Assembly: GCA_047495785.1 (NCBI GenBank)
Contig: JBLDXI010000003.1
Coordinates: forward strand, 1,674,001 to 1,738,000
Length of the DNA stretch: 64,000 nt
DNA from: Lepidodermella squamata
Lineage: Eukaryota > Animalia > Gastrotricha
Direction of reading: 5' to 3'
Positions 3,801 to 64,000 of this stretch are shown here, one piece after another; position 1 is the first letter of the stretch; each line of letters begins with the position of its first letter. The translations under genes and the position numbers were made by a program. Under the pieces are notes generated by a model. It was not told where the DNA came from and searched no databases. It was given only the letters and a program-made list of their open reading frames with translations.

Positions 3801-4405
3801 TTGATAGAATTCTCCATCGATTATCCGCGATTTCACCGAACGATTCCGAAGGAAACCCGGAAAACCCGACTGTTAATTGTTCGGTAATTATCGGTTCGAA
3901 AACTTAAATTTTGAAACTCAAAAATGATCATTTCTAAAAATTCGACTCAACTTCAAAAATTTGGCACCATAAGTTATCCGCGATTTCACCGAAAAATGCC
4001 GAAGAGAACCCGAATGTAAATTATTCGGTAATTTTCGGGATTTAACCTGGTATGAACGAATTTCATGCCATATGAAAATCTTTCTTGAATAGAATTGATG
4101 AAAAAGAAAAATATGTTATTTTTATTTTCAGATTGAGCGGTGATGCTCCGTTCAGTACCGGCAGTGATACGAAGAACAAGATTCGCGAGGCTGAATGGCG
4201 GTCGGAAGATTTGTACGAAAACACGACTAAACCAGCGTTCAAGTACCTCGTTCAAACCCTGAAAGCAGCGCCGCTGCACCGTCTCACCGCCGAGGAGGCG
4301 CAGGAACACAGGTGGCTGGCGCTGACCGAGGAAGCGTCCACAACCCGCCAAGCCGTTTCTTTCTCGACTGCCAAACTTCGAAGCTACAACAATGCCCGAA
4401 AATGA
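886..4405 (+). CDS. 3' portion of an obscurin/UNC-89/SPEG-like giant muscle protein (Ig - FN3 - C-terminal pseudokinase); 5' part lies outside the window
   Basis: Exons 886-1424, 2080-3092, 4132-4405 join in frame at GT-AG sites. I-set Ig (VEGRPAPVVTWYRN...DAAVYKCVARNAFG), FN3 (PGAPGRP...WDAP...GLRPNTIYRFRV), then a kinase fold (FVLK, HSNLNP, LCGFD, FVAPE, DAWSL, RLTAEEAQEHRW). An Ig-FN3-kinase C-terminus is typical of UNC-89/obscurin. Confidence 0.8.
1860..4040. repeat. Dispersed ~60-70 bp imperfect hairpin-like repeat in obscurin introns (copies at ~1860-1930, ~3320-3370, ~3820-3895, ~3973-4040)
   Basis: Shared core tc(t/a)ccgcgatt...ccgaa...acccg(g)aa...ttcggt(a/c)att(a/t)tcgg, with ccga/tcgg self-complementarity, in each copy. 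Confidence 0.5.
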
Positions 4406-4922
4406 GAGAATAAACTCTGTATTCGTTATTTATTACAAGAATTTTCCCTGAATTTTATAATCATTTTTTTACCTGGCGCGTGAATTTTTATGCGTGTTTA
4501 AAATTTATCCTCGACGACGAAAAAAATGGGTCAAAAATCGTACCTCTTGCCCGTTCAAATTGAAGGAAAACTCTGGCTATCGATCACAATTTTCTTCCTT
4601 TCTATACTATAATAGCTGCCTTAAATCGAAATCTCTGTATAAAAATGGGTGCATATTTGAATAATAATTTAAAATACTCGTATGATCTGTGAATATTGAT
4701 GTATTAATCTGATATACGCTCTATACTGCTGGTGTTGAAGGTCGGAAAACTTGCTGACAAGTAAAAAGTTGCTTACCTGGGGTGAAATAATTCTCGAAGA
4801 TTGACAGCGTGCGGGAATGTGGCGGAAACGGGAATTTTTTGTTATGACTACAACGCTTGGAGATGCGGCGACACGGATATTCGAAGGCTGAGAAATCGGG
4901 TAAAAGCGCATCATTTAGCATA

Positions 4923-7900
4923 ATGATGATTTCGCTATGTTTCGCATTACTGCTTTTGGACACGTGTTGCTTGCAGCTGGCTGGCGGTGGGAAAACGTTC
5001 TACAGGCTGCCTGGTCAGAAGCCGATAGCAGCAATTCAGGGCGATGCTTTGGCTAACTATCTATTATCCTCGTAAGCTCGAAATGATGAGCAAATTCAAA
5101 GCCATGCGCTAATGTCAAAGGGTCAAAGGGTTCGATTATTGGGGCGGTTTCGCGACGGAAATAAAATGTAAAATTGTTTCTAGCGAAAGGATATAGGGTT
5201 GTCGTGCGATGTTTACAACTTAAGATTAGCGATTGAAAATAGCCGAAAAGCTCGAAATTTGGGGTTGGGTAGCCTCATTTCGGGGGTGGCTAGATAAACC
5301 CTTATATCTGATAGAAAAAGTTTGAATTTTATTTTGGCCGTAAAACTGCCTCAAAAGTGTCGTACAATTGCGTAACGCGGTGACATTTTAAGGCGTGCTA
5401 CCAGTGACGTTAACAATTAACCGGATGCTATCGCTTACAAACCATTTTCTGCTACGGCTCAATTTGTACTTGCATAAGGTTCAGGTTTGGGTATTTTAGG
5501 TCATGGGGACTTTAGGGGAATGGTTAGCTGTTAGCGTTAGGACTACGGTTAGTCTTAGATCTTATTTCAGGGCTGGTTCTAGGGTTGCCATTTGTGAAAC
5601 TTGATCTTTTGGGTTGAAGTTTAAGGCACGGTTAGCCAGAGGCGTAACCAGCCTCTCACGGTTGGAGGGCCTGGGTCATATTTTCAGGGTGCGCTTAAGG
5701 ATCCAAGAGCTATCAGCTATCAGCTATCAGTATCAGGCTATATTTACGGTTCGGTTGAAGTTGAAGTTGAAAGATTATAAGCGAATGCAGCAGCTGGGTT
5801 CGGCATAACATAAGAATAGATTGGAGTTGTTGCTCATTAAAACGGAAGAAATGGCGTAAATCTCTATGAGAAAAATACTATATAAACTTCCAAAATCACT
5901 CCGTGTAACTTTAGGTCTTTGCTGAACACTGAAAATCACTGTGCATCGGCCTGCGTTACTACTCAGGGCTGCAATGCTGCGTATTACAGAAAATCGGACA
6001 GCACGTGTTATCTGTACTCGGTATCGGTGTCAATGAATCAACTGACCACAGGAGCTGCAGCATCTCAGGACATCACGTTCGACCTTGCTTCAAATGTGAA
6101 ATCAGGCGGTAGTAATGGCGGCCGAGAGAAAGCAATGGCACAGGCTAAAAGAGCGACCAAAGCCTTACTGGACGCTATCAATAAACGTAATTTAAGTCAT
6201 GCTAGGTATTACCAAGCTATACACGCTATTTAAGCCTGCCAAAATGCGCAACCACTCGGGATGCGAGCGCATCCTGGTACTGGCGATCTATGGGACATTT
6301 ATTCGCTCGCCATCCGAAATGACCAACTGATCAGCGGCGCTAATCCCCAGACGGCTCCTCATATTAAAACAAGCTTTGGGCGACTTAACCTGAACTCAGA
6401 ATACTGGAGTGGAACACTTGTCTACTACGCTGGGCAAAGCACGAACTACCCTCTATCTTACTATCAAGTAAAACTATTCATTTATCGATGATCAAAACAG
6501 TCATTGTTTTAACCGCACAATAAGGTTTCGTTCGACACTTTTGTGTGGCTGCACCGTATAGACTTGAAGCCAATGGGATGGACGTTCACATCTTCGCTTG
6601 CGTACAGCCTAGACGGAAACACATGGCTGGATTACTTGTCACCCGCTGGGAGTGTTCAAATTTTAAATCATACTTTGGTGTATAACAGCCAGGCAACCGT
6701 GAGCCTTACACTTTGGAAACCGCTGCTAACTCATCATATCCGCATTCAACCACGTACGTGGATTAGCACTAATTATGGCTTGCAAATCGAGTTTATTGGT
6801 TGCCAAGCATCATGTCGTGGTAAGCTTCATACTGTATAGGGTTTTCATTGTGCCTGGTTCATCGGTTTACTATTTAAAATCGGAAGGATTTTTGTATATT
6901 TCAAGTCTTTAAATTTTTGACAGATTCAAATTTCGATTAAGGGGGGAAGGGTTGCGAGTTGCGAATGTTCAGCAAAACAAGTAGTATTCCAATCTTTGAG
7001 ACTGCATTTTTCCACAGAGCCCCTCGGAATTGAAGCTATGGAGTTAGATTCTTCCCAATTCTCTCAGTCCTCTTCAAGCAATTGTAACCGCACCGCTAAG
7101 TACGCGAACCTTAACAATCCTTGGCACGGTTGGATTGGGGGAAGCCTCGACTTGGCAGAATGGATTCAAGCCGATTTTCAGAAAAATCACATTGTGAGAT
7201 ATATTCTCATTTTGACCTCTAATCTAAGCCTTATTTTAGATCACTGGAGTTTCTACAATGCTCGCCAGGCCAAACCCAGCCGGCCTTCTAGGGGCCACTC
7301 AATTCACCTTGGCCTATTGCAGTGATCCGGATTGTGACGGTGCAAATTTTCAGGACGTCCGAAGCCTCGGATCATCCTCAGCACAGGTTGGAAAGTGCAT
7401 AAATTCTTAGCAATTCCACCCATTGAATTCTAGGTGTTTTCGAGCGCTAATTCTGGAGATGGCTATACGACCAGCTTTTTCGACTATCCAATCATCGCGC
7501 GGATGATACGCTTGATTATCTGGCAGTATTCTACTATGCCGGGAATTAGGTGGGAGATTCTTGGCTGCCGAGGTTCATTTCTTCGAACAATTGAACTGTC
7601 CTCTAAGGTCTCCCATTTTAGAAGTTCCAAATATTATCTTCAAAGCTCCTGATTTGGCTCTTTCGAAGCCCGCGATTTCGTCAACAGGTACTGGATTCAG
7701 CAGAATATCCGCGGTGGAATCGGGCAAGTTAACGGACCAACCTCATCGTGACAATCAAGGTCGGCTGCGCTCTTGCATCCGCGTTGATCCTGTTCCAAAT
7801 AACCAATCGTATGTTTCTATCGACCTTGGGAACATCCAAGCGATGACAGATTTGGCGATAACGCCGCCAAGACTTTACTCCGCCCTTGAGCCTGTCGGTT

Positions 7901-37243: not shown

Positions 37244-37521
37244 TTTATACTGGCTGCGATTATAATTTATTTGTTATGATTACAACATGATTATATTTTC
37301 GTTCTTGCAATTTCTATTTCTTATTGTTTTGCCTGATATTCGTGATTTTTTTTACCACTTCTTCTTGTTTTTGAGGAAATAAATCGATTTGATCAATTTC
37401 GCTCATCTTTTGCATACGATTACCAGCTAAACAAAACCCAGAATTGGTCCAATCAAAATTATCATCCTTTTTTGAGAAAGAATATTGGTGAATTTTTTTG
37501 TAAATCGCGAGGTTTCAAGTG

Positions 37522-37593
37522 GGCTCAGTAGCTTAGTGGTAGAGCGTCTGTCTCGTAAACAGAAGATCGCGGGTTCAATTCCCGCCTGGGCCT
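37522..37593 (+). tRNA. tRNA-Thr(CGT)
   Basis: GGCTCAG acceptor arm pairing with CTGGGCC, U discriminator, anticodon stem TCTGT/ACAGA with loop CTCGTAA, T loop GGTTCAATTCC. Confidence 0.92.
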
Positions 37594-37672
37594 TGCGATA
37601 TGATTCATTTTGAGCGAAATTTTGAGATTATTTTAAAATTAAAATTAAAAAAAAACGGCAAAATAGTGAGCT

Positions 37673-37742
37673 TCATCGGCCGGGAATCGAACCCGGGCCT
37701 CCCGCGTGGCAGGCGAGAATTCTACCACTGAACCACCGATGC
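37673..37742 (-). tRNA. tRNA-Gly(GCC) with a 1-nt loss at the 3' end of the acceptor stem (possible pseudogene or sequence error)
   Basis: Reverse complement matches the other Gly-GCC copies except that it ends ...CCGATGAAG instead of ...CCGATGCAAG. Confidence 0.8.
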
Positions 37743-38788
37743 CTTGCTTACAGCGTGTAACGTTACATTGGTGTCATACATGCGTGTTAATTATTGTCCT
37801 CATGACGCGTTCTAAGCTCAGTTCACTCGCTTCTTTTCGCTCTCTTCATTTTAGGTTAGCAACAAATGAAAATGCGGCATTTTTCACAACTTTCCATTCA
37901 GATTAAATTAACTTTACTAAACGCTAAAATATTATATTATGTCTGCGCCGATGGCACCTGGAATTCATTGCCCCTTGAAATTGCAAAAGCTTTCCATTGA
38001 GCACTTTCAAACGGCAGCGCTTAAAAACTATACCCTATTTTACTTCGAAAGATGCGATTGATGTTACCCGGGCGCAATCCTAATATAAGAGCGCGCGCAG
38101 TGTCATTCAAATCGGTGAAAAAATAAGCTGAAATGCGAACACGCGCCGGCATCGCAAAAGTGACGCATACTTTCCTCAATAATATATTATTTTTCTCTTC
38201 ACACGTGCATGTGGCCCCGCCTTTCATGATGGCCTGTGTGCTGTGTCACTTCGGAGCACAATTCATAGCGTGCGGTCTGCCATCTTCGTAGCGACATTCC
38301 AGCCTATTTCGAGAGGAAGTTGTCCGACAAAAAAATTTACCGGCTAAGTAAAAAACGCGCGCTTACAGCCACCAAAAACCCTAAAATCAATTGCTACTCA
38401 CGCGACTCACTTCGTGCCCTGGCCCATTTTCTACTGTAAATCTATTTTAGCTGCCAAACAATCTTGGCTCTAACTTACGAAGCTGGAAATTACACTCCCC
38501 TCGGTCCAAAACCATGACTTTATTCCACTTCATGCTGGTGAGAAGTAAAAAAAAAGATGCAATTTTATATTTGTATGGTATGACATGAGTAAAACGTTTA
38601 TATCTGTACGGAGCCGCCCGAGATTTACGAGTCGGAACGAGCCGGAGGCGAGTTGCGATGAGTAAATCGAGTGCGGCGAGTTCAGATATGAACGATTTAC
38701 GAATGTTATACCGTAAAATATCGAATTGTCATAGCGACTCGACATATATTTTTGACGACAATTCTATATTTTCACGATATTTTTAGTG

Positions 38789-40101
38789 ATGTCTATTTAC
38801 AGCCTGGAAAATCGGAAAAATTTATTTTTGGCAATTACGACTGTATTTACTCTCCTGCTCTGCTACTTCCTTTTCAACTATCATGCTATCATTGCTAATG
38901 TGGGATGCAATGTCGTAGTCCAAACGTATGCACCCACGAACCCGCCGGAAACAACTACGGACAAAAACTGGCCTATTCTCGAAACGCAACCATGGGCGAG
39001 TCGACTCGAGCTGCTTCTTTCAACAGCAACTAATGCCGATGCCGACAAGGAGAACAGGGAACTACTACTACCCTCGCTCACCTTATTTTGGCCCATGTCC
39101 CAGCCTCTGAATCTCGCTATGGTCAGTGATAAGGAAGACCCAACTGCCCCGGCGTTTCTAGAAAATATGACAAATGTCATGGACGAACTTCGTCCCGATA
39201 ATGTGACTGTGAGGACGCTGCTGGGCGTGAAAGCCTTCCCGGGTGATGGCTGGCATAAGGCTCAATGGATGAAGCTATGGGCCGACAACTTCACGAAAAA
39301 AGAATTCGTCGGGTATATAGATACGGACACGGTTTTCACGGCTCGGGTCACTCAGCGGGACCTGTTTGTTGATGGGAAACCAATTGTCCGGCCAAGGTAC
39401 GGCAAACCAATACCGGATTGGGAATGGCCCAGGGTTCCGGAAAGAACCTTCTCACTTCTCGGAATGAAGGGCAAGTTTCGTTTCCCACGTAAATTCTGTT
39501 GAAATTGAGATTTGCAGAACCTTTCAGCTGCATGTCGTACTTTCCGATCATTGTCAAAACAGCACATTTAGCGACGGTTCGCGAAACTGTTAGAAAACAT
39601 GCCAAGAAACCTTACTTCGACGCTGTTATGGCGAAGAAAAAGGACTACTCCGAGTACGGTCTGATTTGCACGGTTTTGTGGTACTTCTTCCGCGACGAAT
39701 ACTACTGGGTGATCAATGAGATGGAACTTGGCTGGACTGGGCCAGTACCACCGGGGCAAGTGGCTGATATACAAGAAGCTGGCATTCCACCGGAAATAAT
39801 GAATAGGCAACGGCCAAGGATAGCGCTTCACTGGACTTACTTCCCCGGTCATAACGAGACAGGTGCATTCAAAACGGCGATGCGGAAAGGGTACTGCTAC
39901 TCTCTGACGCATTCTGAGAAGCGCCCTGGCTTCTGCTCGATCTACAACCGTTTCGCTTCTGTAAATGAGAATCAGTTCCAATTCGAGGTTGTTGACTATT
40001 CAAAACGAAAAGGAGCGTATGAATCGCATCTTTTACGCATAGCGGAACTGGAAAGTTTTCCTCACTCGTGGAATAAATTGCAAGTGGATGCTCTGAAATA
40101 A
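38789..40101 (+). CDS. Type II membrane DxD-motif glycosyltransferase-like protein, copy 1
   Basis: Exons 38789-39470 and 39518-40101 (GC-AG intron). Short cytosolic N-terminus, one TM helix, Thr/Pro stem, QWMKLWADNFT..EFVGYIDTDTVFT...DLFVDGKP (DxD after a hydrophobic strand, GT-A-like). Confidence 0.7.
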
Positions 40102-40778
40102 ATCGCATCACTTTTTTTAATAAGCGTAATATTTGTTTTATATGGTGCAAAACGAGCTTAATATCAGATACCGTACCAACAGAGAATAATGTTAGACTCA
40201 AGCCTCAAATAAGCGTCACGGCGGTAAGGGAATTTCAATTGTAGGAACCTCTTTTCTGAACGTTTCTTCGTGAGACCGTAAACTTTGGTCGCTAGGTCGA
40301 GTTTTACAGAGCATAGCTGCTACCAACGGGTTGAAAATCTGATCTTGGCATGTCGCCGCGGCATCAATCACAGTAGTAGTGCACTGTCACAGCAGTTGCG
40401 CTATCGGGTGCGACTGCGAACTGGCCATGTGCGCAGTATTTTCATCCTGTGTCATTAACTATGCAAATTTTTCGTAAAAAAAACAGGAAACAACATTTCC
40501 ATGCAAAAGGTTAGAGGATAAATCTCCCTTTCTTCTTATATTTCTTGTTTTTTTCACATAAATTCCCATAACGATAAAAATCAAACTTTTGTTTGGGAAT
40601 GCATGCGAAAGCTGATGAGTTGTATAGGTGATCCTTATATGCATAACACCCATGATTCTGAAGTTAAATGAACTTGTCGGCACAGCCTAATTAGTCCGAA
40701 GCCACCACTTAATGCCAACTCTTAATGCTAAGCAGTACGTATAGTTATGATGAACTACATATTATGTGCGGTTTAGCA

Positions 40779-42106
40779 ATGCTTATTTTTTACTGCCTGG
40801 AAAATCGGAAAACTTTCATATTGGCAATCTCAACTGTATTAACTCTCCTGCTCTGCTATTTACTTTTCAACTGTCATGCTACCACTTCTAATGAGGAATG
40901 CAACGTTGTAGTCCAAACGAATGCACGCCCGAACCTGCTGGAAACATCCACGGCCAAAAACCAGCGGTTGATTTCTGTCGAATCTCATTCATGGGCGAGT
41001 AATCTCGAGCTGTTTCTGTCAACGGCAACTTCTGCCGATGCTGAGAAGGAGAACAAGGAACAACTACTACCATCGCTTACCCTATTTTGGCCCATGTCCC
41101 AACCTCTGAATCTCGCTATGGTCAGTGATAAGGAGGATCCCACTGCCCCGGCGTTTCTAGAAAATATGAAGAGTTTCACGCATCAGCTTCGTCCCGGTAA
41201 TTTGACTGTTAGGACTTTGTTGGTCGAGAAGGCTTTTCCATACGATGGCTGGCACAAGTCTCAATGGATGAAGCTGTGGGCCGACAACTTCACGCAGTCG
41301 GAATTCGTAGGTTTCATAGATACGGACACGGTTTTTACCGCTCGAGTCACTCAGCGTGACCTATTTGTTGATGGAAAGCCAATCATGAGGCCGAAGTACG
41401 GCAAACCAGTACCTGCTTGGGAATGGGATAAGGTTCCAGAGAGAACCTTCAGACTTCTGGGGATGAAGGGCAAGTTTCGATTTCAAAATTCTTCTTATAT
41501 ATTATATTATAAAATGTTCCAGAACCTTTCAGCTGCATGTCGTTCTTTCCAGTGGTTGTGAAAACAGCTCATTTAGCAACCGTTCGCGAGACTATAAGAA
41601 AAAAGGCTGGGAAAGATTACTTTGACGCAGTAATGGCCAATGAAAGGTACTACTCTGAGTACGGTCTAATGTGCACTGTATTGTGGTACTTCTTTCGCGA
41701 CGAATACTACTGGGTGATCAATGAAATGGAACTAGGCTGGACGGGACCAGTACCCCCAGGGCAAGTGGCTAACCTACAAGAAGCTGGCATTCCACCGGAA
41801 ATAATGAATCGCCAACGGCCGAGTATTGCACTACACTGGACTTACTTCCCAGGTCATAGCGAGATAGATGCATTGAAAACGGCGATGCGGAAAGGGTACT
41901 GTTACTCGCTGACACGTTCCGAAAATCAGCCTGGCTTCTGCTCAATCTACAACCGTTCGGCTTCTGTTAACGAGAATCAGTTCCAATTTGAGATTGTTGA
42001 CTACTCAAAGCGAAACGGAGCGCTCGAGTCGCATCTATTGCGCTTAGAGGAACTGGAAAATTTCCCTCATTCGTGGAATAAATTGCGCGTGGATGATTTA
42101 GAATAA
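40779..42106 (+). CDS. Type II membrane DxD-motif glycosyltransferase-like protein, copy 2
   Basis: Exons 40779-41469 and 41523-42106 (GC-AG intron); highly similar to copy 1 (EFVGFIDTDTVFT). Confidence 0.7.
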
Positions 42107-52514: not shown

Positions 52515-53839
52515 TTATTTCAAAGCTTCTACTTGCAATTTATTCCAAGAATGCGGGCAACCTTCGAGTTCCGCTTGGCGCAATAGGTGCGACTCGTAAG
52601 CTCCTGGTCGTTTTGAATAATCAGTGGTCTCAAACTGGAACTGATACTCATTCACTGAATCAAACCGGCTGTAATTTGCGCAAAAATCAGGCTTCTTTTC
52701 AACACGAGTTAGGGAGTAGCAATATCCCTTCCGCATCACATTTTTGAATGCATCTTTCTCTTTAAGACGCGGGAAGTAAGTCCAGTGAAATGCGACACTC
52801 GGCCGTTGGCGATTCATTATTTCCGGCGGGATACCAGCTTCTTGAGGTGAAGCGACCTGTCCAGCTGGTATTGGACCTTTCCAGCCAAGTTCGGCCTCGC
52901 CAATCACCCAGTAGTACTCATCGCGGAAAAAATTCCACAGAACTGTACACATCAAGCTGTACTCGGAGTATTTCAATTCACCTGCCATTGCTGCGTCAAA
53001 ATACGTCTTCCCATTTGCTTTCCTGATTGTCTCTCGAACAGTGGCTAAATGCTTCGTTTTAATCACAACCGGAAAGTAAGACATGCAGTTGAAAGTTTCT
53101 GCAAAAGAAAAAATTATCGTTTGCACAGGAAAAGTTAATATTTACCTTTGATCCCGAGTAATTTGTAATTTTCAGCCGGAATATTCGCCCATTCGGTCCA
53201 TATGTCGGTTGCTGGCTTGCCGTACTTTGGCCTAACAATCGGTTTGCCATCAACAAACAGGTCACGCTGAGCGATTCGTGCTGTGAAAACCGTGTCCGTG
53301 TCCATGAAGCCGACAAATTCTGCTTTCGTAAAATTATCGGCCCACAGCTTCATCCATTGAGCCCTGTGCCAGCCATCTTTAGGGAAGGCCTTCTCGTTCA
53401 GCATCTTCCTTATGGTCACATTTTCGGGGCGAAACTGCCGCGTTAGATTTGCGAGGTCGTCAAGAAACGCCGTAGCCTTCGGGTCTTCCCAATCGCCGAC
53501 TATGACCAGATTCAGAGGTTGAGACATGGGCCAGAAGAGAGTAAGCGAGGGCATTAGCAATTCCTTGTTCTCCATCTTAGATTCGGCATCTGTTGGCGTA
53601 GACAGGTACAGCTCGAGATTGCTCGCCCATAGCTGAGTTTCGTCGCACATGGGATTTGAGGAAATTCTAGGATTCAAGATTTGTGCTAGGTAGGTTGGTA
53701 TGCTGATGTTGGAACCTTCGATTCCGATTATATTGTACCCGCTTTCATGGCGCGAGCAAGAGTAGAGCAGTAGAAGCAAGGTGATTGATAAGCCGAGAAG
53801 TATAAAAGCTTTTCGGTTTCCTGAGCAGCGAGCTTGCAT
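52515..53839 (-). CDS. Type II membrane DxD-motif glycosyltransferase-like protein, copy 3 (inverted)
   Basis: Exons 53839-53146 and 53098-52515; canonical GT-AG intron at the same position as in copies 1 and 2; EFVGFMDTDTVFT. Confidence 0.7.
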
Positions 53840-54514
53840 TGCTTGAAAATCGTAATTTCTAACAGATTCGAAATAAAGATTTGTAATTTTGCTCATTAAT
53901 TGAGTGTACAGTTTTCTTTAATTAAAATTCCAAATACTTCCTGTGCGATCTGGCGGTAAAAAATAGCGCTAATAGGTGATGGATATATTCTCGAGAATGA
54001 TTTCAGTACGTAATCATCGTCAGCACGAATGAAATTGCGATTCGTGTGATTTTATTTTAGCAGAGAAAGCAACAAACATAGATGAGAAATTGAAGCTATC
54101 CCGATCTTCACTTGTTATTTACAAAATGAGCACGCGACCTTAAGACCTCATTAAATAGCGATAATAAATTGTTTTGTTTAATCAGTCGCGAATTTCGGAA
54201 CAATAAATACGAATTATTCCTCGTAATTTTTGACGGAAGACAATTATCTTCAATGAACCCAGGTCATCATCGCTGGTTATTTTCCCAACTTTTGATCTGG
54301 ACAATTTGTCGCCACCCTAGTAACTGCGTCATCGGGAAATGTCATCATTTTCCTTTTATAATTCATAGTGTCGGGGCCCGAGTCCAAATTCGGCCCGTAC
54401 GCGCTCCGGCCGGCCCGTACGCATTTGGAGAGGCCCTTTTTGTGCACTTAAATTTATAATGCACTCATTACCTAGGTTAACAATAGCACGTTGCTGACGG
54501 CCAAGGTAAGCACG

Positions 54515-54585
54515 GCATCGGTGGTTCAGTGGTAGAATTCTCGCCTGCCACGCGGGAGGCCCGGGTTCGATTCCCGGCCGATGCA
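54515..54585 (+). tRNA. tRNA-Gly(GCC)
   Basis: GCATCGGTGGTTCAGTGGTAGAATTCTCGCCTGCCACGCGGGAGGCCCGGGTTCGATTCCCGGCCGATGCA followed by a T-run terminator. Confidence 0.95.
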
Positions 54586-54866: not shown

Positions 54867-59713
<4,847 letters not shown>

Positions 59714-60230
59714 TTTGCATCATAATGGGATAGATGAGCATCATTTTCTCGCTAAAATGCTGTCAACGATGCAACAGATTTGTGCTCATCTCAACTATCG
59801 TGCTGTCTAACTTTCAGGCAAAGCAGTCCGTAGATTTTTCGAAGGCGATTGTACGCAAATAAACTGAGAGACAATGACTTAATCCGGAGCCTTTGACTTC
59901 AATTATATCATTATATTCAATATTATATTACGGTTCAATATTATGGTGGGTGGTATGCTCTCCCGCTTTGCTCCACAAGCTACCGTGTTGCAAGTTTCAA
60001 TGTAAACCTATGAGCAACAATAGCTTGTATGCACCGTATGCACAGCCGTTAGCCGGTGGTTATCCGTTGGTGTAGTAACAGCTCACCTCTGGCCGCGACG
60101 GTGGAAAGCCGCATATTTATGCTCACGATATGCGTTGTATGGCAACTATGCCGCTTAAATTAGGACGTCAAGCTATTAAGCAGGGAACGTACTAGCTATA
60201 AGCTCAGTTGCTGAGTTAAACATAAGCAAG

Positions 60231-60301
60231 GCATCGGTGGTTCAGTGGTAGAATTCTCGCCTGCCACGCGGGAGGCCCGGGTTCGATTCCCGGCCGATGC
60301 A
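60231..60301 (+). tRNA. tRNA-Gly(GCC)
   Basis: Identical to the 54515 copy. Confidence 0.95.
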
Positions 60302-60383
60302 AGCTCATTATTTTGCCGCTGTTTTTTTTAGATTTTCATTAAAATAATCATCAGCCTTCACTGAAAAAATCAATCATATCGCT

Positions 60384-60455
60384 AGGCCCAGGCGGGAATT
60401 GAACCCGCGATCTTCTGTTTACGAGACAGACGCTCTACCACTAAGCTACTGAGCC
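60384..60455 (-). tRNA. tRNA-Thr(CGT)
   Basis: Reverse complement identical to the 37522 copy. Confidence 0.92.
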
Positions 60456-60658
60456 TGTTCATTTCGAGCCTTGAAGTCACAAACTATCTCCGATCCACTG
60501 TGGTGGGTTAGGAATATCCTAAGTATTTTATTAAGGCCGGGTATCAGGTACAATTCAACTATAAGAATTCAATTGGTATTTTAAGGTTATCAATTTCCAA
60601 AGGGGAAGGGGAAAGTGTTATGAAAGTGTTAGGATAGCTCCAAAAGCGTCGCAATGGT

Positions 60659-61454
60659 TTAGTCAACATTGACACCCCAGGTACTCTGGTCCTGGCAATC
60701 AACACGGCGAGCATCCAGATCGTCGTGATTTTTCTTCAACCAGCTCAACTTGGCAGCGTTGGCTTTCTTGCAAAAAACAGCCGGATCGCCTTGATACTCA
60801 ACACCGAATACAGCCTTATTCTGCTTGATGAACGTGCTGCTGTAGCCATCACATTCCTTGAAGAAATAGCACTGCTCGTTAAGAGCCCAATCGAAACTAT
60901 CGACAAGAGCAGCCAGTTGGCTGACATCGTTCTTCAGACCAATGCTTAGGCCGAGAGCATGGGCTTCAGCCGCGATCCATTTGTTGAACTTCAGCTGATC
61001 GTTGGCCGTCGTCGCAAATCCTGTAGCCTTGCCGAAGGTGAATGAGTCCATGTTGTCCGGTTCAACGGCGTCGCATTTCTTGCTCTTCGCCAGTTGCAGA
61101 CGCCAACAGGGGAGCTTTCAACGCTTCACTACGGACGTCGAACCACTTCTCCCCCTGCCAACCATCCATAGCCTTGCCAATGACTGCCGAAGAAAAGTTG
61201 CCCTTATCCGGACGCCAGTTTTCCCAAGTTCCGGCTGAGAAATAGCAAACGACAATACGGCCATCTCGGTGTAACTTGTCGACGACAGATTGGTCCGAGT
61301 CGAACAGATCGATGTCATACATGGCGACGTTGTAGGATGTGTCGATTTTTCCAGTCAGCTGCCATTGCCAGGTTGTCAAAGGCGCTGGTTTCCAAATCGC
61401 AGCCCGAGCAGCGTAACCCAAAGTCAAAACTAGGAGGGCTGATAATCTGTGCAT
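60659..61454 (-). pseudogene. GH114 endo-alpha-1,4-polygalactosaminidase-like, copy A, frameshifted near 61106
   Basis: Signal peptide, WQWQL, YDIDLFD, CYFSAGTWENWRPD in one frame; WRLQLAKSKKCDAVEPDNMD, GLKNDV, NEQC, VFGVEY in another; CTG-T-TGG versus the paralogue's CTG-AAA-TGG at the break. Confidence 0.8.
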
Positions 61455-61950
61455 TTTTTGGTAAATGACTGTTCCCTAATTCGCGACTTATATCAGCTCT
61501 GAGTTGTTTACATAACATTGTATAAACAAACATTTAGATTTGGTGATCGGGTTAAGCCAGATTATTTTCGCACTCAATGAAACACTGATTAGCTGATTTT
61601 AGTAATTGCCAACATAACTCTAGGATGACGGCGCAATATGTTCCAATACGTGCAAATTCTCAGGGAATAACTGGATGCTGCCTTTCGACTTTCCACTCAT
61701 TAGGGCAATCAGAGTTAGGTATATGCAAAGTGGCCACACCGAAAGCGGAAGATTAGCCGTCATTCTGTTTTCGGACAAAACTGTAAACTGGGATGTGGGA
61801 AACTTTCAGCCGTAATTTGTCCATCCATTGTGTGACTACTTTCAACATGGAATTCTTAAAACATATTTACCTGCAAGTGCATCTTCACCTTAATGCTTTT
61901 ATTTACCAGCTTGGATAACATAGAATCATAATTTTTTACGATCGAAGTTT

Positions 61951-62751
61951 TTATCCAACGCTCGTCGTCCATGTCTTACTGCTCTCTTGACAGTCGACGC
62001 GGCGCTGATCGAGATTCAGATTCTTTTTCATCCAACTCATTTTCATGGAATTCATTTTCGGGCAGAACGACGACGGACTGCCCTTGTATTCAACCCCAAA
62101 AACAGCCTTATTAGCCGCTATGAACGTATTTGTGTACCTGCCACATTCGTTATACTGATTGCATTGCTCGCTCAAGGCCCAATCGAAATCATTGACGAGC
62201 GACGAGAGTTGGTCCAAGTCGTTCTTCAGGCCTACGCTCAGCCCGTAGCTATGTGCCGTAGTTGCCAGCCATTTGTTGAAATTCAGCTGATCCGCTGCTG
62301 TTACTGGGAAACCAGGGTTTGCATCGTAGGAATCTACGTTATCTGGCTCAACGCCGTCACATTTTTTCCGGGTTGCGAGCTCAAGTCGCCATTTCAGAGC
62401 TCGTTTTACAGCTTCACTTCGAACATCTAGCCACCTCTCTCCTGGCCATTCATCGAGGCTATTGCCGATACTGGCTGAGGTGAAGTTATTTTTGTCCGGA
62501 CGCCAGTTTTCATGTGTTCCGGCTGAGAAGTAGCAGATGACGATACGGCCATCGCGATGCAACTTGTCGATAACAGATTGAGGCGCATCGAACAGGTCGA
62601 TGTCGTACATGGCCACGTTGTAGGACGTGTTGATTGTGCCTGTCAGCTGCCATTGCCATGTCGTAAGAGGCTTCGGCTGCCAAATAGCAGTGCTCGCGCC
62701 GAAAACTAGGAAAGTCAAGTAAAAAATGTAGCGTATCATTTCAGCTGGCAT
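61951..62751 (-). CDS. Secreted GH114 endo-alpha-1,4-polygalactosaminidase-like glycoside hydrolase, copy B (intact, intronless)
   Basis: Signal peptide; WQWQL, YDIDLFD, ICYFSAG, WRPD, WPGERWLDVRS, CDGVEPDNVD, GLKND, EQC, VFGVEY are hallmark GH114 (PF03537, Ega3-like) motifs. Confidence 0.9.
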   Translation of the reverse strand: MPAEMIRYIFYLTFLVFGASTAIWQPKPLTTWQWQLTGTINTSYNVAMYDIDLFDAPQSVIDKLHRDGRIVICYFSAGTHENWRPDKNNFTSASIGNSLDEWPGERWLDVRSEAVKRALKWRLELATRKKCDGVEPDNVDSYDANPGFPVTAADQLNFNKWLATTAHSYGLSVGLKNDLDQLSSLVNDFDWALSEQCNQYNECGRYTNTFIAANKAVFGVEYKGSPSSFCPKMNSMKMSWMKKNLNLDQRRVDCQESSKTWTTSVG

Positions 62752-63008
62752 AAAAAAAGCCGAATAACGCCGCTATTTACCTGGTTTTTAGTCGTGTTCA
62801 TAACATCCGAGGGTTTGTTTAACTAGCACTGCTAAGTAAATAAACGTTATATCTGAGGGTGGAAACAGAGAATGATGAGTATTGCTATTGTTTCAGCCAA
62901 GGATTACGCATTTTGACTCGGTTGTTTCCAGGGTTAAATTTGGCAAAATATCTTTCCTCGGGTGATACGGGGAAACCGAGAAGCAGAGTATCGAATCGAA
63001 TTATGTCA

Positions 63009-63080
63009 GGCTCAGTAGCTTAGTGGTAGAGCGTCTGTCTCGTAAACAGAAGATCGCGGGTTCAATTCCCGCCTGGGCCT
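63009..63080 (+). tRNA. tRNA-Thr(CGT)
   Basis: Identical to the 37522 copy. Confidence 0.92.
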
Positions 63081-63159
63081 AGCGATGAATCATTTTTTAG
63101 CGAAAGTTGAACATTATCTTAATGAAAATTAAAAATAAATACGGGCAAAATAATGAGCT

Positions 63160-63230
63160 TGCATCGGCCGGGAATCGAACCCGGGCCTCCCGCGTGGCAG
63201 GCGAGAATTCTACCACTGAACCACCGATGC
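63160..63230 (-). tRNA. tRNA-Gly(GCC)
   Basis: Reverse complement identical to the 54515 and 60231 copies. Confidence 0.95.
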
Positions 63231-64000
63231 CTTGCTGGAGTCCTTACCTTAGTAGCGGTCTATTTCGCTAACATGTTAGTTACCTGAAGTTAGTTGCCTG
63301 AGTGCAACGACCTCAGTCATAGGGCAACACGGTAATACGTGCGCGCGCGTGTGGCAGCGATGTAGTTATGTTTCCTTCATTTTATACTGGCCCCTCTTTG
63401 CGAGCAGGCCGTATTGTTGCTTGGATTTACTGTTTATTGTATTAGCATTCATTTCATGCGGACTACTTAGGTTAAGGTTAGCAATTTTAGCAAGAAGCTC
63501 AATAAAAATGCATCTCTTAACTTCTGCTATCTGCCATCCTTACCTCGGCACTGCAGTCCTATAAGCATCCCGAACAATCAAATTGAGTCGGAACCCGCAT
63601 GATTAGGCTCACGGAATCGAAAAACTGGCCTCATCCCTTTTGGGGTTTCGTCACTAATAAAGTTAAAATTAGCATGAAATTTATTAATCTTGAACTGCTC
63701 GCGCAATCTGATTGGAATCAGAGTTGCTAGTTAAGTGTGAAGTATGCCAGTATGCTGCATCAACTCAGTAAAAAATGATCTCCTCTACTTTTTGAACGCT
63801 CAATTTGCATAGCTGACTTGGGTTCGAAAGTCGAAAGAGCAGTATTAAAGCTCTGATTTCGTTAGTTGTCGGGGATCATCGGCATCCCATATATGAAATG
63901 GCGATTACTGACAGCAGCTAATCACTCAAGGACGTATATCAGTGTTTCCATTGAGTGCGAAAGTAATACTGCTCAACCCGAACAGCGACCTAATATTTAC

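What the first reader, a model, noticed from the sequence alone, without database searches (positions are those of the whole stretch)
60231..63230. Microbial-type GH114 hydrolase pair enclosed by inverted tRNA-pair repeats
Seen: Gly(+)Thr(-) [GH114-A, GH114-B] Thr(+)Gly(-), a 3.0-kb unit with ~220-bp inverted terminal repeats made of tRNA genes. Both enzymes are intronless, whereas the other well-supported protein genes in the window are spliced; both have signal peptides and keep the EPDN Asp and EQC Glu. Known: GH114 (e.g. Aspergillus Ega3) is mainly bacterial and fungal and cleaves alpha-1,4-galactosamine polymers such as fungal galactosaminogalactan and Pseudomonas Pel. Inference: a horizontally acquired anti-biofilm, antifungal or digestive module in an animal, held in a tRNA-bounded, potentially invertible cassette reminiscent of tRNA-anchored genomic islands.
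Basis: partly seen in the sequence, partly recalled or inferred. Interest (0 to 1): 0.75.

Follow-up and report, generated by a model that had tools for sequence, protein, structure and literature searches.

The report
Bacterial-type GH114 genes in gastrotrich genome
A small invertebrate (probably the gastrotrich Lepidodermella squamata) carries a six-gene family of secreted, bacterial-type enzymes that cut galactosamine slime polymers of microbes, but the tRNA genes around two of them are ordinary host tRNA genes copied along in an old local duplication, not the ends of a mobile or invertible cassette.

Summary
Three corrections apply. GH114-A carries a 2-bp deletion that puts its catalytic motifs out of frame. 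The unit is not self-contained. It is the centre of a larger, old palindrome: ABCC(+), tRNA pair, GH114-A(-), then GH114-B(-) and a tRNA pair, then GH114-C(+), tRNA pair, ABCC'(-). Its arms are 77-80% identical. The Gly/Thr pair is a host tRNA unit with at least 10 full copies, in both orientations, over about 180 kb of this contig. The three other GH114 paralogues have no tRNA gene in the 10-18 kb scanned around them.

The horizontal-transfer idea holds up. GH114-B is Ega3-like in sequence, fold and catalytic Asp/Glu. Its nearest relatives are bacterial at 55-63% identity, and nothing closer exists among 1.84 billion cluster representatives. In the tree the genes sit inside a bacterial cluster, apart from a protist clade. 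They lie 0.5-1.5 kb from intron-bearing animal genes on a 4.6-Mb contig. The A/C pair shows dN/dS of about 0.1 at dS of about 1.

The most likely role is secreted digestive or anti-biofilm polygalactosaminidases. Expression and activity were not tested. This is a new member of a known kind.

The parts
54940..59713 (+). ABCC/MRP-type ABC transporter gene with short GT-AG introns. It forms the left arm of the old inverted duplication. Its partner ABCC' lies beyond the window at window-equivalent 65898-74565 on the minus strand.
   Evidence: Pfam hits TMD0_ABC, ABC_membrane and ABC_tran. Two 51-nt introns are visible in the sequence. The arms are 77-78% identical at the nucleotide level. Three further ABCC copies and one fragment lie on contig C3.
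60231..60301 (+). tRNA-Gly(GCC), the first gene of pair 1. It is a host nuclear tRNA gene followed by a T-run.
   Evidence: ARAGORN. The terminator-like T-run is seen. Copies 100% identical over the tRNA lie on contigs C24, C19 and C3.
60383..60456 (-). tRNA-Thr(CGU), the second gene of pair 1, convergent with the tRNA-Gly across an 81-bp spacer.
   Evidence: ARAGORN. The four aligned pair copies share only the two tRNAs and the spacer.
60659..61454 (-). GH114-A. It has a signal peptide and a GH114 domain but is frameshifted by a 2-bp deletion at 61106/61107, so the protein as encoded stops after 130 aa. It is the mirror copy of the intact GH114-C.
   Evidence: Two 130-aa ORFs each hit half of PF03537. 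The deletion is seen against B, C and D. A is 81% identical to C in protein, with dN/dS 0.097 and dS 1.04.
61455..61630 (-). Upstream region of GH114-A, conserved with the upstream region of GH114-C. This is the inner end of the left palindrome arm.
   Evidence: Inverted repeats I3 and I4. The blastn match 60652-61589 to 63938-64884 is 79.5% identical.
61951..62751 (-). GH114-B, an intact, intronless gene for a 266-aa secreted Ega3-like endo-alpha-1,4-polygalactosaminidase. It lies in the centre of the palindrome.
   Evidence: PF03537 at 282 bits. Ega3 (6oj1) matches at E 8e-61. The AlphaFold2 model has pLDDT 93 and its best PDB match is Ega3 at TM 0.83/0.88. Asp of EPDN and Glu of SEQC align with Ega3 Asp189 and Glu247.
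63008..63081 (+). tRNA-Thr(CGU) of pair 2, the central pair.
   Evidence: ARAGORN. It is 100% complementary to 60378-60457.
63160..63230 (-). tRNA-Gly(GCC) of pair 2.
   Evidence: ARAGORN. Pair 2 is 93% identical to pair 1 (inverted) and to pair 3 (direct).
63880..64000 (+). Start of the right palindrome arm, which is the upstream region of GH114-C. The gene itself is L008:5080-5877, window-equivalent 64080-64877 on the plus strand, just beyond the window. It is followed by tRNA pair 3, a tRNA-Gln and ABCC' on the minus strand.

Best explanation
The stretch is part of a six-member family (A-F) of intronless genes for secreted GH114 endo-alpha-1,4-polygalactosaminidases. An ancestor of this animal took the family up from bacteria long ago, and it then multiplied by local duplication. 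The animal is probably the gastrotrich Lepidodermella squamata.

Four copies (B, C, D, E) are intact and keep the catalytic Asp and Glu. A has a young 2-bp frameshift. F has lost both catalytic residues.

Three copies sit in one cluster that arose by an old inverted duplication of a block [ABCC transporter, Gly/Thr tRNA pair, GH114]. GH114-B and one more tRNA pair lie at the centre of that palindrome. The tRNA pairs are ordinary host Pol III genes that are locally amplified along about 180 kb. They were copied along as passengers and do not bound a mobile or invertible element.

Inferred, not shown: the enzymes are secreted into the gut or pharynx, or onto the body surface. There they cut partly deacetylated alpha-1,4-GalN/GalNAc exopolysaccharides, meaning bacterial Pel-type matrix and fungal galactosaminogalactan. 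This would help a biofilm- and bacteria-grazing animal to loosen and digest its food.
For: Family, fold and active site:
- PF03537 at 282 bits and Ega3 at E 8e-61.
- The model has pLDDT 93 and matches Ega3 at TM 0.83/0.88 and rmsd 1.9.
- The Ega3 nucleophile Asp189 and acid/base Glu247 (PMC12054363) align with the D of EPDN and the E of (N/S)EQC in A-E.
- Six cysteines are conserved, with a hydrophobic N-terminal leader.

Foreign origin:
- The best 120 hits of B and of E are at 50-63% identity, and every hit that carries an organism name is bacterial: Chloroflexota and Myxococcota among the named proteins, with Thermodesulfobacteriota, Acidobacteriota and Pseudomonadota added by the named bacterial genomes.
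- No representative among 1.84 billion is above 62% identical.
- The solved fungal enzymes are more distant, at 43% and 27%.
- In the careful ML tree A-D form one clade (100/97) inside a 61-row cluster in which all 23 named genome loci are bacterial. That cluster also holds two long-branch eukaryote rows, Plasmodiophora and Dinochytrium. It is separate from the Diplonema/Hondaea/Abeoforma clade.
- One member of the nearest group sits among TonB/ExbB genes.

Residence in the host:
- The genes lie on a 4.56-Mb contig about 0.95 kb from a spliced ABCC gene.
- There are six copies at three loci on two contigs.
- Neighbours include a kinase, ankyrin, F-box, IIGP-like GTPases and a retroelement.
- The duplication that includes ABCC has arms only 77-80% identical, so GH114 was already in the genome long ago.
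- A-C dN/dS is 0.10 and B-D is 0.16.
- GC3 is 0.53-0.66, against a bacterial median of 0.71 and 0.48 for the host ABCC exon.

tRNA pairs as passengers.
Against: The backbone of the tree is unresolved, so no donor lineage can be named. An unsampled eukaryote as intermediate donor is not excluded. The weakly attached neighbour P0163 lies on a contig with a classical tyrosine-phosphatase gene.

It is not settled whether A-D and E-F came in once or twice. E+F has only 97/41 support, and the AU test does not reject a single clade (p = 0.23).

Absence from other animals rests on public data in which gastrotrichs are almost unsampled, and most of the 150 best representatives carry no name.

No transcript evidence was obtained. 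The exact proteins are not in the 15-billion collection.

Substrate and site of action are inferred from homology alone. The species identity rests on matching assembly statistics and on an earlier unverified note.
Confidence: 0.72

Rival explanations
1. The 3-kb segment is a discrete cassette bounded by inverted tRNA-pair repeats. It was acquired as a unit, is able to invert or move by recombination between the repeats, and is analogous to tRNA-anchored genomic islands.
For: Inverted arms of 233 nt at 93% identity really do flank A and B. Repeats of that size can in principle support inversion by homologous recombination. The spacer within the pair copies is better conserved than the surrounding duplicated DNA, which could reflect gene conversion.
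Against: The tRNAs are host multi-copy genes, with at least 10 full pair copies in both orientations over 180 kb. The pairs lie inside the arms of a larger ABCC-containing palindrome rather than at its breakpoints. A third GH114 gene and a third pair lie directly outside the 'cassette'. One ABCC+pair unit has no GH114. Paralogues D, E and F have no tRNA gene in the 10-18 kb scanned. The scanned neighbouring ORFs include no integrase or recombinase. Homology stops at the tRNA gene edges, with no att-like partial tRNA repeats. The assembly holds no second allele in the other orientation.
Confidence: 0.06
2. Contamination or assembly chimera. The GH114 genes are bacterial DNA joined to an animal contig, for example by chimeric reads from the multiple-displacement amplification used for this assembly.
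For: The published L. squamata assembly was made from MDA-amplified DNA, and 370 non-metazoan contigs had to be removed from it (PMC11660948). MDA is known to create inverted chimeric reads (abstract of PMC13265396).
Against: There are six diverged paralogues at three loci on two multi-megabase contigs. The palindrome arms differ by 20-23% and include the spliced ABCC gene, so the palindrome is evolutionary and not an amplification artefact. No bacterial genes are adjacent. No bacterial protein is more than 63% identical. AATAAA motifs lie downstream of both stop codons.
Confidence: 0.03
3. Not a transfer from bacteria. GH114 is an old eukaryotic gene inherited vertically and lost in most animals, or it was acquired from another eukaryote such as a fungus or protist.
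For: GH114 domains occur in scattered eukaryotes: Plasmodiophora, Diplonema, Hondaea, the holozoan Abeoforma and a chytrid. The tree backbone is weak. One neighbour in the tree, P0163, is on a contig with a eukaryote-typical PTP gene. The paralogues are as far from one another (52-66%) as from bacteria, which shows great age.
Against: The named eukaryotic sequences are 35-45% identical, against 55-63% for bacteria. Diplonema, Hondaea and Abeoforma form a separate, strongly supported clade (100/99) away from the gastrotrich genes. The genes have no introns. No animal homologue appeared among the best hits of two searches of 5.8 billion proteins. Fungal Ega3 and FsGH114 are more distant than the bacterial proteins.
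Confidence: 0.12
4. Same origin, different use. The enzymes serve defence or housekeeping rather than feeding. They would clear fungal or bacterial biofilm from the cuticle and eggs, act against parasitic fungi, or remodel the animal's own secreted adhesive or mucus.
For: Ega3 and its relatives disrupt Aspergillus and Pseudomonas biofilms (PMC12054363; titles and abstracts). The C19 copies lie beside IIGP-like immune-type GTPase genes. The catalytically dead paralogue F could act as a glycan-binding sensor.
Against: Nothing here separates defence from digestion, and there are no expression data. No GalN polymer is known to me in gastrotrich secretions; that rests on my own knowledge and was not tested.
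Confidence: 0.25

Closest known systems
Aspergillus fumigatus Ega3 (CAZy GH114; PDB 6oj1/6ojb), a retaining endo-alpha-1,4-galactosaminidase
   Same: It shares the Pfam family and the (beta/alpha)8 barrel, at TM 0.83/0.88 and 43% identity over 248 aligned columns. The Asp nucleophile and Glu acid/base are in the same motifs. Both are secreted or extracellular.
   Different: Ega3 belongs to the fungal galactosaminogalactan gene cluster. The genes here are in an animal, are closer to bacterial GH114 (55-63%) than to Ega3, are not accompanied by GAG-synthesis genes in the stretches examined, and form a six-copy family. Activity has not been tested.
Bacterial stand-alone GH114 'endo alpha-1,4 polygalactosaminidase' proteins of Chloroflexota, Myxococcota, Thermodesulfobacteriota and Acidobacteriota
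   Same: These are the nearest sequences, at 55-63% identity over the whole domain. They share the six cysteines and the same single-domain secreted architecture.
   Different: The gastrotrich genes have eukaryotic-style signal peptides, lower GC3, AATAAA motifs downstream and animal neighbours. No bacterial sequence is close enough to name a donor.
Horizontally acquired glycoside hydrolases of microscopic invertebrates, such as plant-cell-wall enzymes of nematodes and the many foreign CAZymes of bdelloid rotifers
   Same: The pattern is the same: an intronless, secreted, microbial-type hydrolase that is integrated among host genes, expanded by duplication and under purifying selection (PMC4632278 was seen by title and abstract only).
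   Different: I found no report of GH114 in an animal among the 113 papers that mention GH114 or PF03537 and the 41 that mention polygalactosaminidase. The presumed substrate is microbial matrix polysaccharide, not plant cell wall.
tRNA-anchored genomic islands and integrative elements of bacteria
   Same: The only shared feature is that tRNA genes lie on both sides of foreign-derived genes.
   Different: Such islands have an integrase and direct repeats made from the 3' part of one bacterial tRNA gene. Here complete host tRNA gene pairs stand in inverted orientation, no integrase is seen, and the pairs are abundant elsewhere without GH114.

Membership tests
CAZy GH114 / Pfam PF03537 (endo-alpha-1,4-polygalactosaminidase) | Sequence match to the family model above the curated cut-off, over the full domain | tested here: met
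   B scores 282 bits against a cut-off of 27, over profile positions 1-229 of 231. The two halves of A score 114 and 112 bits. Six loci in the genome are over the cut-off.
CAZy GH114 / Pfam PF03537 (endo-alpha-1,4-polygalactosaminidase) | (beta/alpha)8 TIM-barrel fold like Ega3 | tested here: met
   The AlphaFold2 model of B has pLDDT 93 and pTM 0.88. Foldseek ranks 6oj1 first at E 6e-28, TM 0.83/0.88 and rmsd 1.9, followed by FsGH114, GH191 and PelA.
CAZy GH114 / Pfam PF03537 (endo-alpha-1,4-polygalactosaminidase) | Catalytic Asp nucleophile and Glu acid/base (Ega3 Asp189 and Glu247) | tested here: met
   Both residues are aligned and conserved in A-E. In A they lie after the frameshift. The feature is not met in F, where the Asp position is Tyr and the Glu position is Asp.
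CAZy GH114 / Pfam PF03537 (endo-alpha-1,4-polygalactosaminidase) | Hydrolysis of alpha-1,4-linked GalN/GalNAc polymers | not testable with these tools
   This needs recombinant enzyme and substrate.
Horizontally transferred gene resident in an animal genome | Nested among non-animal sequences in a phylogeny | tested here: met
   The careful IQ-TREE run has 79 rows. A-D (100/97) and E+F lie within a 61-row cluster in which all 23 named genome loci are bacterial; it also holds the long-branch Plasmodiophora and Dinochytrium rows. The cluster is apart from the Diplonema/Hondaea/Abeoforma clade. The backbone is weak and the root is not inferred.
Horizontally transferred gene resident in an animal genome | Physical linkage to bona fide host genes, so not contamination | tested here: met
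   The genes share a 4.56-Mb contig with spliced ABCC genes on both sides. The old palindrome includes both ABCC and GH114.
Horizontally transferred gene resident in an animal genome | Absence from other animals | tested here: inconclusive
   No animal protein appears among the best hits of three searches, and nothing is above 63% identity. Most hits are unnamed, only the top 120-150 are visible, and gastrotrichs are barely sampled.
Horizontally transferred gene resident in an animal genome | Evidence of function in the host, meaning selection or expression | tested here: inconclusive
   Purifying selection is shown among the paralogues, with dN/dS 0.10-0.22. Expression could not be tested.
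tRNA-anchored genomic island or invertible cassette | Integrase or recombinase gene, and repeats derived from the target tRNA at the element's ends | tested here: not met
   Pfam scans of the large neighbouring ORFs find no integrase or recombinase. The repeats are whole host tRNA gene pairs, and homology ends at the gene edges.
tRNA-anchored genomic island or invertible cassette | The association of cargo with the flanking tRNAs is specific and repeated | tested here: not met
   There are at least 10 pair copies, most without GH114. Three of the six GH114 genes have no tRNA gene in the 10-18 kb scanned. The local association traces back to a single duplicated ABCC-pair-GH114 block.
tRNA-anchored genomic island or invertible cassette | Orientation or presence polymorphism | not testable with these tools
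   Only one haplotype of the region is in the assembly.

The most novel reading that the evidence does not exclude
This would be the first animal GH114 family. A gastrotrich domesticated a bacterial polygalactosaminidase and expanded it into a toolkit for grazing on Pel- or GAG-type biofilm matrix. The toolkit includes a catalytically dead but otherwise intact member (F) that may have become a galactosamine-polymer-binding protein. In addition, the host tRNA pairs scattered through the region may have promoted the repeated local duplications and inversions that built the cluster.
Probability: 0.3. Interest if true: 0.55.

Novelty: new member of a known kind. Interest (0 to 1): 0.42.

Why it matters
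Foreign glycoside hydrolases are a recurring route by which microscopic animals gain new diets. This case adds a family, GH114, whose known substrates are the cationic matrix polysaccharides of bacterial (Pel) and fungal (GAG) biofilms. I found no published animal example of it. If the enzymes are active, they would show that a biofilm grazer can dismantle the matrix itself and need not rely on its microbiota. They would also offer eukaryote-adapted, secreted, disulfide-stabilised biofilm-dispersing enzymes for comparison with Ega3 and PelA. The negative result matters too. tRNA genes on both sides of a foreign gene in a eukaryote need not mean a mobile cassette; here they are passengers of segmental duplication.

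Tried and rejected
- **Exact-sequence look-ups.** I looked up B (two start codons), C, D, E and F in the 15-billion-protein collection and in the contig index. None is on record, so no transcript or relative evidence came from that route.
- **Naming the nearest tree neighbours.** P0127, P0163, P0264 and P0233 are all unnamed metagenome or Logan proteins. The contigs of P0127 and P0264 are too short to type. P0163's contig has a tyrosine-phosphatase gene but no DNA was available.
- **HGT compendium paper.** It has no supplementary text held.
- **Protein atlas.** It only confirmed the family and gave no useful taxonomy.
- **Earlier findings on transcription evidence.** Nothing usable came up.
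- **FastTree of 251 rows.** It put F far from E, which I took as a long-branch effect. The careful mixture-model tree joins E and F weakly.
- **Palindrome as an MDA artefact.** Considered and rejected, because the arms differ by 20-23%.
- **Frameshift in A as a homopolymer sequencing error.** Considered and judged unlikely, because the 2-bp gap is not in a homopolymer or dinucleotide run. It cannot be excluded without reads.
- **Named fungal sequences in the tree.** None could be included apart from one chytrid, because PDB chains are not available as references and I did not type sequences.
Full report
**Observation**

ARAGORN finds seven tRNA genes in the window. The repeat finder and a self-blastn give inverted arms 60225-60457 and 63007-63236, 233 nt long and 92.7% identical. 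The Thr arm is 100% complementary.

Between the arms, on the minus strand, lie an intact 266-aa ORF (GH114-B, 61951-62751) and two abutting 130-aa ORFs (GH114-A, 60659-61051 and 61062-61454). All three hit Pfam PF03537. B covers the whole model at 282 bits, and the two A pieces cover its first and second halves.

Aligning A with its paralogues shows a 2-bp deletion in A at window 61106/61107. It is not in a homopolymer run. A is therefore frameshifted, and its EPDN and NEQC motifs are out of frame with its start codon. The assembly holds no second allele of the region.

The neighbouring ABCC gene has two clear 51-nt GT-AG introns near its 3' end, while the GH114 genes are single ORFs.

**The unit is not self-contained**

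The window is G000:C3:1674001-1738000 of a 121.2-Mb assembly in 151 contigs. A six-frame search of that assembly with PF03537 finds six GH114 genes:
- A and B, in the window.
- C, which starts 80 bp beyond the window's end on the plus strand (L008:5080-5877).
- D, about 180 kb upstream on the same contig (L002:1411-2211).
- E and F, a tandem pair on contig C19 (L004:1423-2202 and L004:2440-3225).

Past C lie a third Thr(+)/Gly(-) pair, a tRNA-Gln, and a second ABCC gene on the minus strand. Self-comparison of the extended region gives these matches:
- ABCC (54940-59703) against ABCC' (65898-74565), inverted, 77-78% identical.
- Pair 1 against pair 3, inverted, 89% identical.
- A with 135 bp of its upstream region (60652-61589) against C (63938-64884), inverted, 79.5% identical.

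The structure is thus an old palindrome: ABCC(+), pair, A(-), then B(-) and a pair, then C(+), pair, ABCC'(-). B and the central tRNA pair lie between the arms.

**The tRNA pairs are host genes and common here**

The 236-bp pair unit has at least 10 full-length copies on C3 between 1.573 and 1.755 Mb, at 79-93% identity. Three are in one orientation and seven in the other. Single Gly or Thr genes 100% identical over the tRNA occur on several other contigs, some in tandem arrays.

Each tRNA is followed by a T-run and has no encoded CCA. An alignment of four pair copies shows that similarity begins a few bases before tRNA-Gly and ends at the edge of tRNA-Thr. A third ABCC copy (C3:1756537-1759518, minus strand) also has a pair at its 3' side (1755146) but no GH114 gene. 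No tRNA gene was found in the 10-18 kb scanned around D or around E/F; the nearest scan edge is about 6.8-7.4 kb from the gene.

Pfam scans of the large ORFs around the three loci show a kinase, ankyrin, F-box, a radical-SAM protein, DUF6492, IIGP-like GTPases, a reverse transcriptase and a CBM_1 protein. They show no integrase or recombinase. The tRNA flanks are therefore passengers of segmental duplication in a tRNA-rich neighbourhood. The comparison with tRNA-anchored islands fails every test I could apply.

**What the genes encode**

GH114-B matches Aspergillus fumigatus Ega3 (6oj1) at E 8e-61. An AlphaFold2 model built on 45 sequences has mean pLDDT 93. Its best PDB match is Ega3 at TM 0.83/0.88, rmsd 1.9 and 43% identity. 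The next matches are Fusarium GH114, the GH191 enzymes and PelA.

The experimentally verified nucleophile and acid/base of Ega3 are Asp189 and Glu247 (PMC12054363). In the printed alignment these are the D of 'DPDN' and the E of 'NEQC', 58 residues apart. They align with the D of EPDN and the E of SEQC in B. A-E keep both residues. F has Tyr and Asp at these positions but keeps an open frame, a leader and all six conserved cysteines.

All copies start with a short hydrophobic leader that ends in a small-x-small motif just before the conserved IW(Q/K)P. In the model this leader is a low-confidence N-terminal helix. No signal-peptide predictor was available, so 'secreted' is an inference.

**Origin**

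Searches of 5.8 billion proteins with B and with E return the same set of hits at 50-63% identity. Every hit that carries an organism name is a bacterial MAG protein called endo alpha-1,4 polygalactosaminidase. A scan of one genome per prokaryotic species gives 296 relatives. The best 80, at 53-62% identity, are in Chloroflexota, Myxococcota (including complete Sorangium genomes), Thermodesulfobacteriota, Acidobacteriota, Pseudomonadota and others.

An exhaustive HMMER search of 1.84 billion cluster representatives finds 4979 relatives but none above 62% identity. The multi-domain hits among them belong to protists and a chytrid: Plasmodiophora, Diplonema, Hondaea, Abeoforma and Dinochytrium. 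They are 35-45% identical.

I built a careful IQ-TREE (LG+C20 PMSF) from 79 domain sequences: the six paralogues, 27 named bacterial loci, 18 eukaryote domain rows from 6 proteins, and 28 rows from unnamed representatives and one unnamed word-search hit. I left out the other 172 rows of the 251-row set to keep the run feasible. The results:
- A-D form one clade with 100/97 support.
- E+F are joined weakly, at 97/41.
- Both groups lie inside a 61-row, poorly resolved cluster in which all 23 named genome loci are bacterial. Two long-branch eukaryote rows, Plasmodiophora and Dinochytrium, also fall in it.
- Diplonema, Hondaea and Abeoforma form a separate clade with 100/99 support.

One member of the group nearest to A-D lies among TonB-receptor and ExbB genes in two MAGs. 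An AU test does not reject all six genes forming one clade (p = 0.23). One entry or two therefore remains open, and no donor can be named.

**Residence and selection**

The palindrome arms, which contain both ABCC and GH114, have diverged by 20-23%. A-C has dS of about 1.0 with dN/dS 0.097, and B-D has dN/dS 0.16. More distant pairs are saturated at synonymous sites. In the tree A and C have equal branch lengths, so A's frameshift is young, or possibly an error.

GC3 of the six genes is 0.53-0.66. That lies between the host ABCC exon (0.48) and the bacterial homologues (median 0.71). AATAAA motifs follow both stop codons. These facts rule out contamination and an amplification artefact. They show long residence under purifying selection.

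**Species**

The assembly size and contig number (121.2 Mb, 151 contigs) fit the published MDA/HiFi assembly of the gastrotrich Lepidodermella squamata (122 Mb, 157 contigs; PMC11660948). I did not verify it independently.

**Function (inferred)**

Known GH114 enzymes are retaining endo-hydrolases of alpha-1,4-linked galactosamine-rich polymers. Relatives of this clan disperse Pel and galactosaminogalactan biofilms (PMC12054363). A secreted family of four intact catalytic copies, in an animal that by my own knowledge feeds on bacteria, biofilm and detritus, most simply serves to loosen and digest microbial matrix. A defensive or surface-cleaning role is equally compatible with the sequence data. 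Expression, localisation and activity are untested.

**Literature and novelty**

Among the 113 papers that mention GH114 or PF03537 and the 41 that mention polygalactosaminidase, I saw none reporting the family in an animal. The HGT compendium's tables were not available. The finding is therefore a new member of a well-known kind: a microbial glycoside hydrolase domesticated by a microscopic invertebrate.

**Limits**

Noticed in passing
L004:2440-3225 (G000:C19, about 2633433-2634218): GH114-F stands in tandem with the intact GH114-E. It has Tyr at the nucleophile Asp position and Asp at the acid/base Glu position. It keeps an open frame, a leader peptide and all six conserved cysteines, so it is a candidate non-catalytic glycan-binding paralogue.
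   Followed up: partly
window 38786-39502 (+), 40725-41561 (+), 53135-53896 (-): Three ORFs hit Pfam DUF6492 at about the gathering score (22-23 bits against 22.9). They may be a second unusual or foreign-type family in the same neighbourhood, near the tRNA pair at 37521-37742 and the solo tRNA-Gly at 54515.
   Followed up: no
L010:1548-2429 (-) (G000:C19, about 2626547-2627428): A 293-aa ORF with two fungal-type cellulose-binding CBM_1 modules (E 2.7e-13) lies about 5 kb upstream of GH114-E. It is another candidate foreign carbohydrate-binding gene.
   Followed up: no
G000:C3 1572749-1755385; window 37521-37742, 54515-54585, 60231-60456, 63008-63230: A convergent tRNA-Gly(GCC)/tRNA-Thr(CGU) gene pair of about 235 bp is amplified at least 10 times in both orientations over about 180 kb. 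Three copies sit at the 3' side of ABCC paralogues. tRNA-Gly also forms regular tandem arrays on C24, C31 and C10, with periods of about 3.4-4.5 kb.
   Followed up: partly
window 54940-59713 and G000:C3 1740621-1743602, 1756537-1759518, 1805792-1808773, 1819908-1820609: A local family of ABCC/MRP transporter genes. The four full copies are 72-77% identical in protein over the 1005-aa exon, and there is one fragment. Two of the copies face each other as the arms of the palindrome around the GH114 cluster.
   Followed up: partly
L012:1509-2594 (-) and 4238-5497 (-), beside GH114-F on C19: Two IIGP-like (interferon-inducible GTPase family) ORFs and a reverse-transcriptase ORF (L012:6314-8464) lie directly downstream of the E/F pair.
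   Followed up: no
proteins P0121, P0124, P0166, P0168, P0221: In protists GH114 occurs as tandem multi-domain proteins: five domains in Plasmodiophora brassicae, three in Diplonema, and two to three in Hondaea and the holozoan Abeoforma. The gastrotrich genes are single-domain. In the tree, the domains of Plasmodiophora, of Diplonema and of Abeoforma each group together; in Hondaea the two domains of one protein (P0166) pair with each other, while the one domain of the second protein (P0221) stands apart from them.
   Followed up: partly
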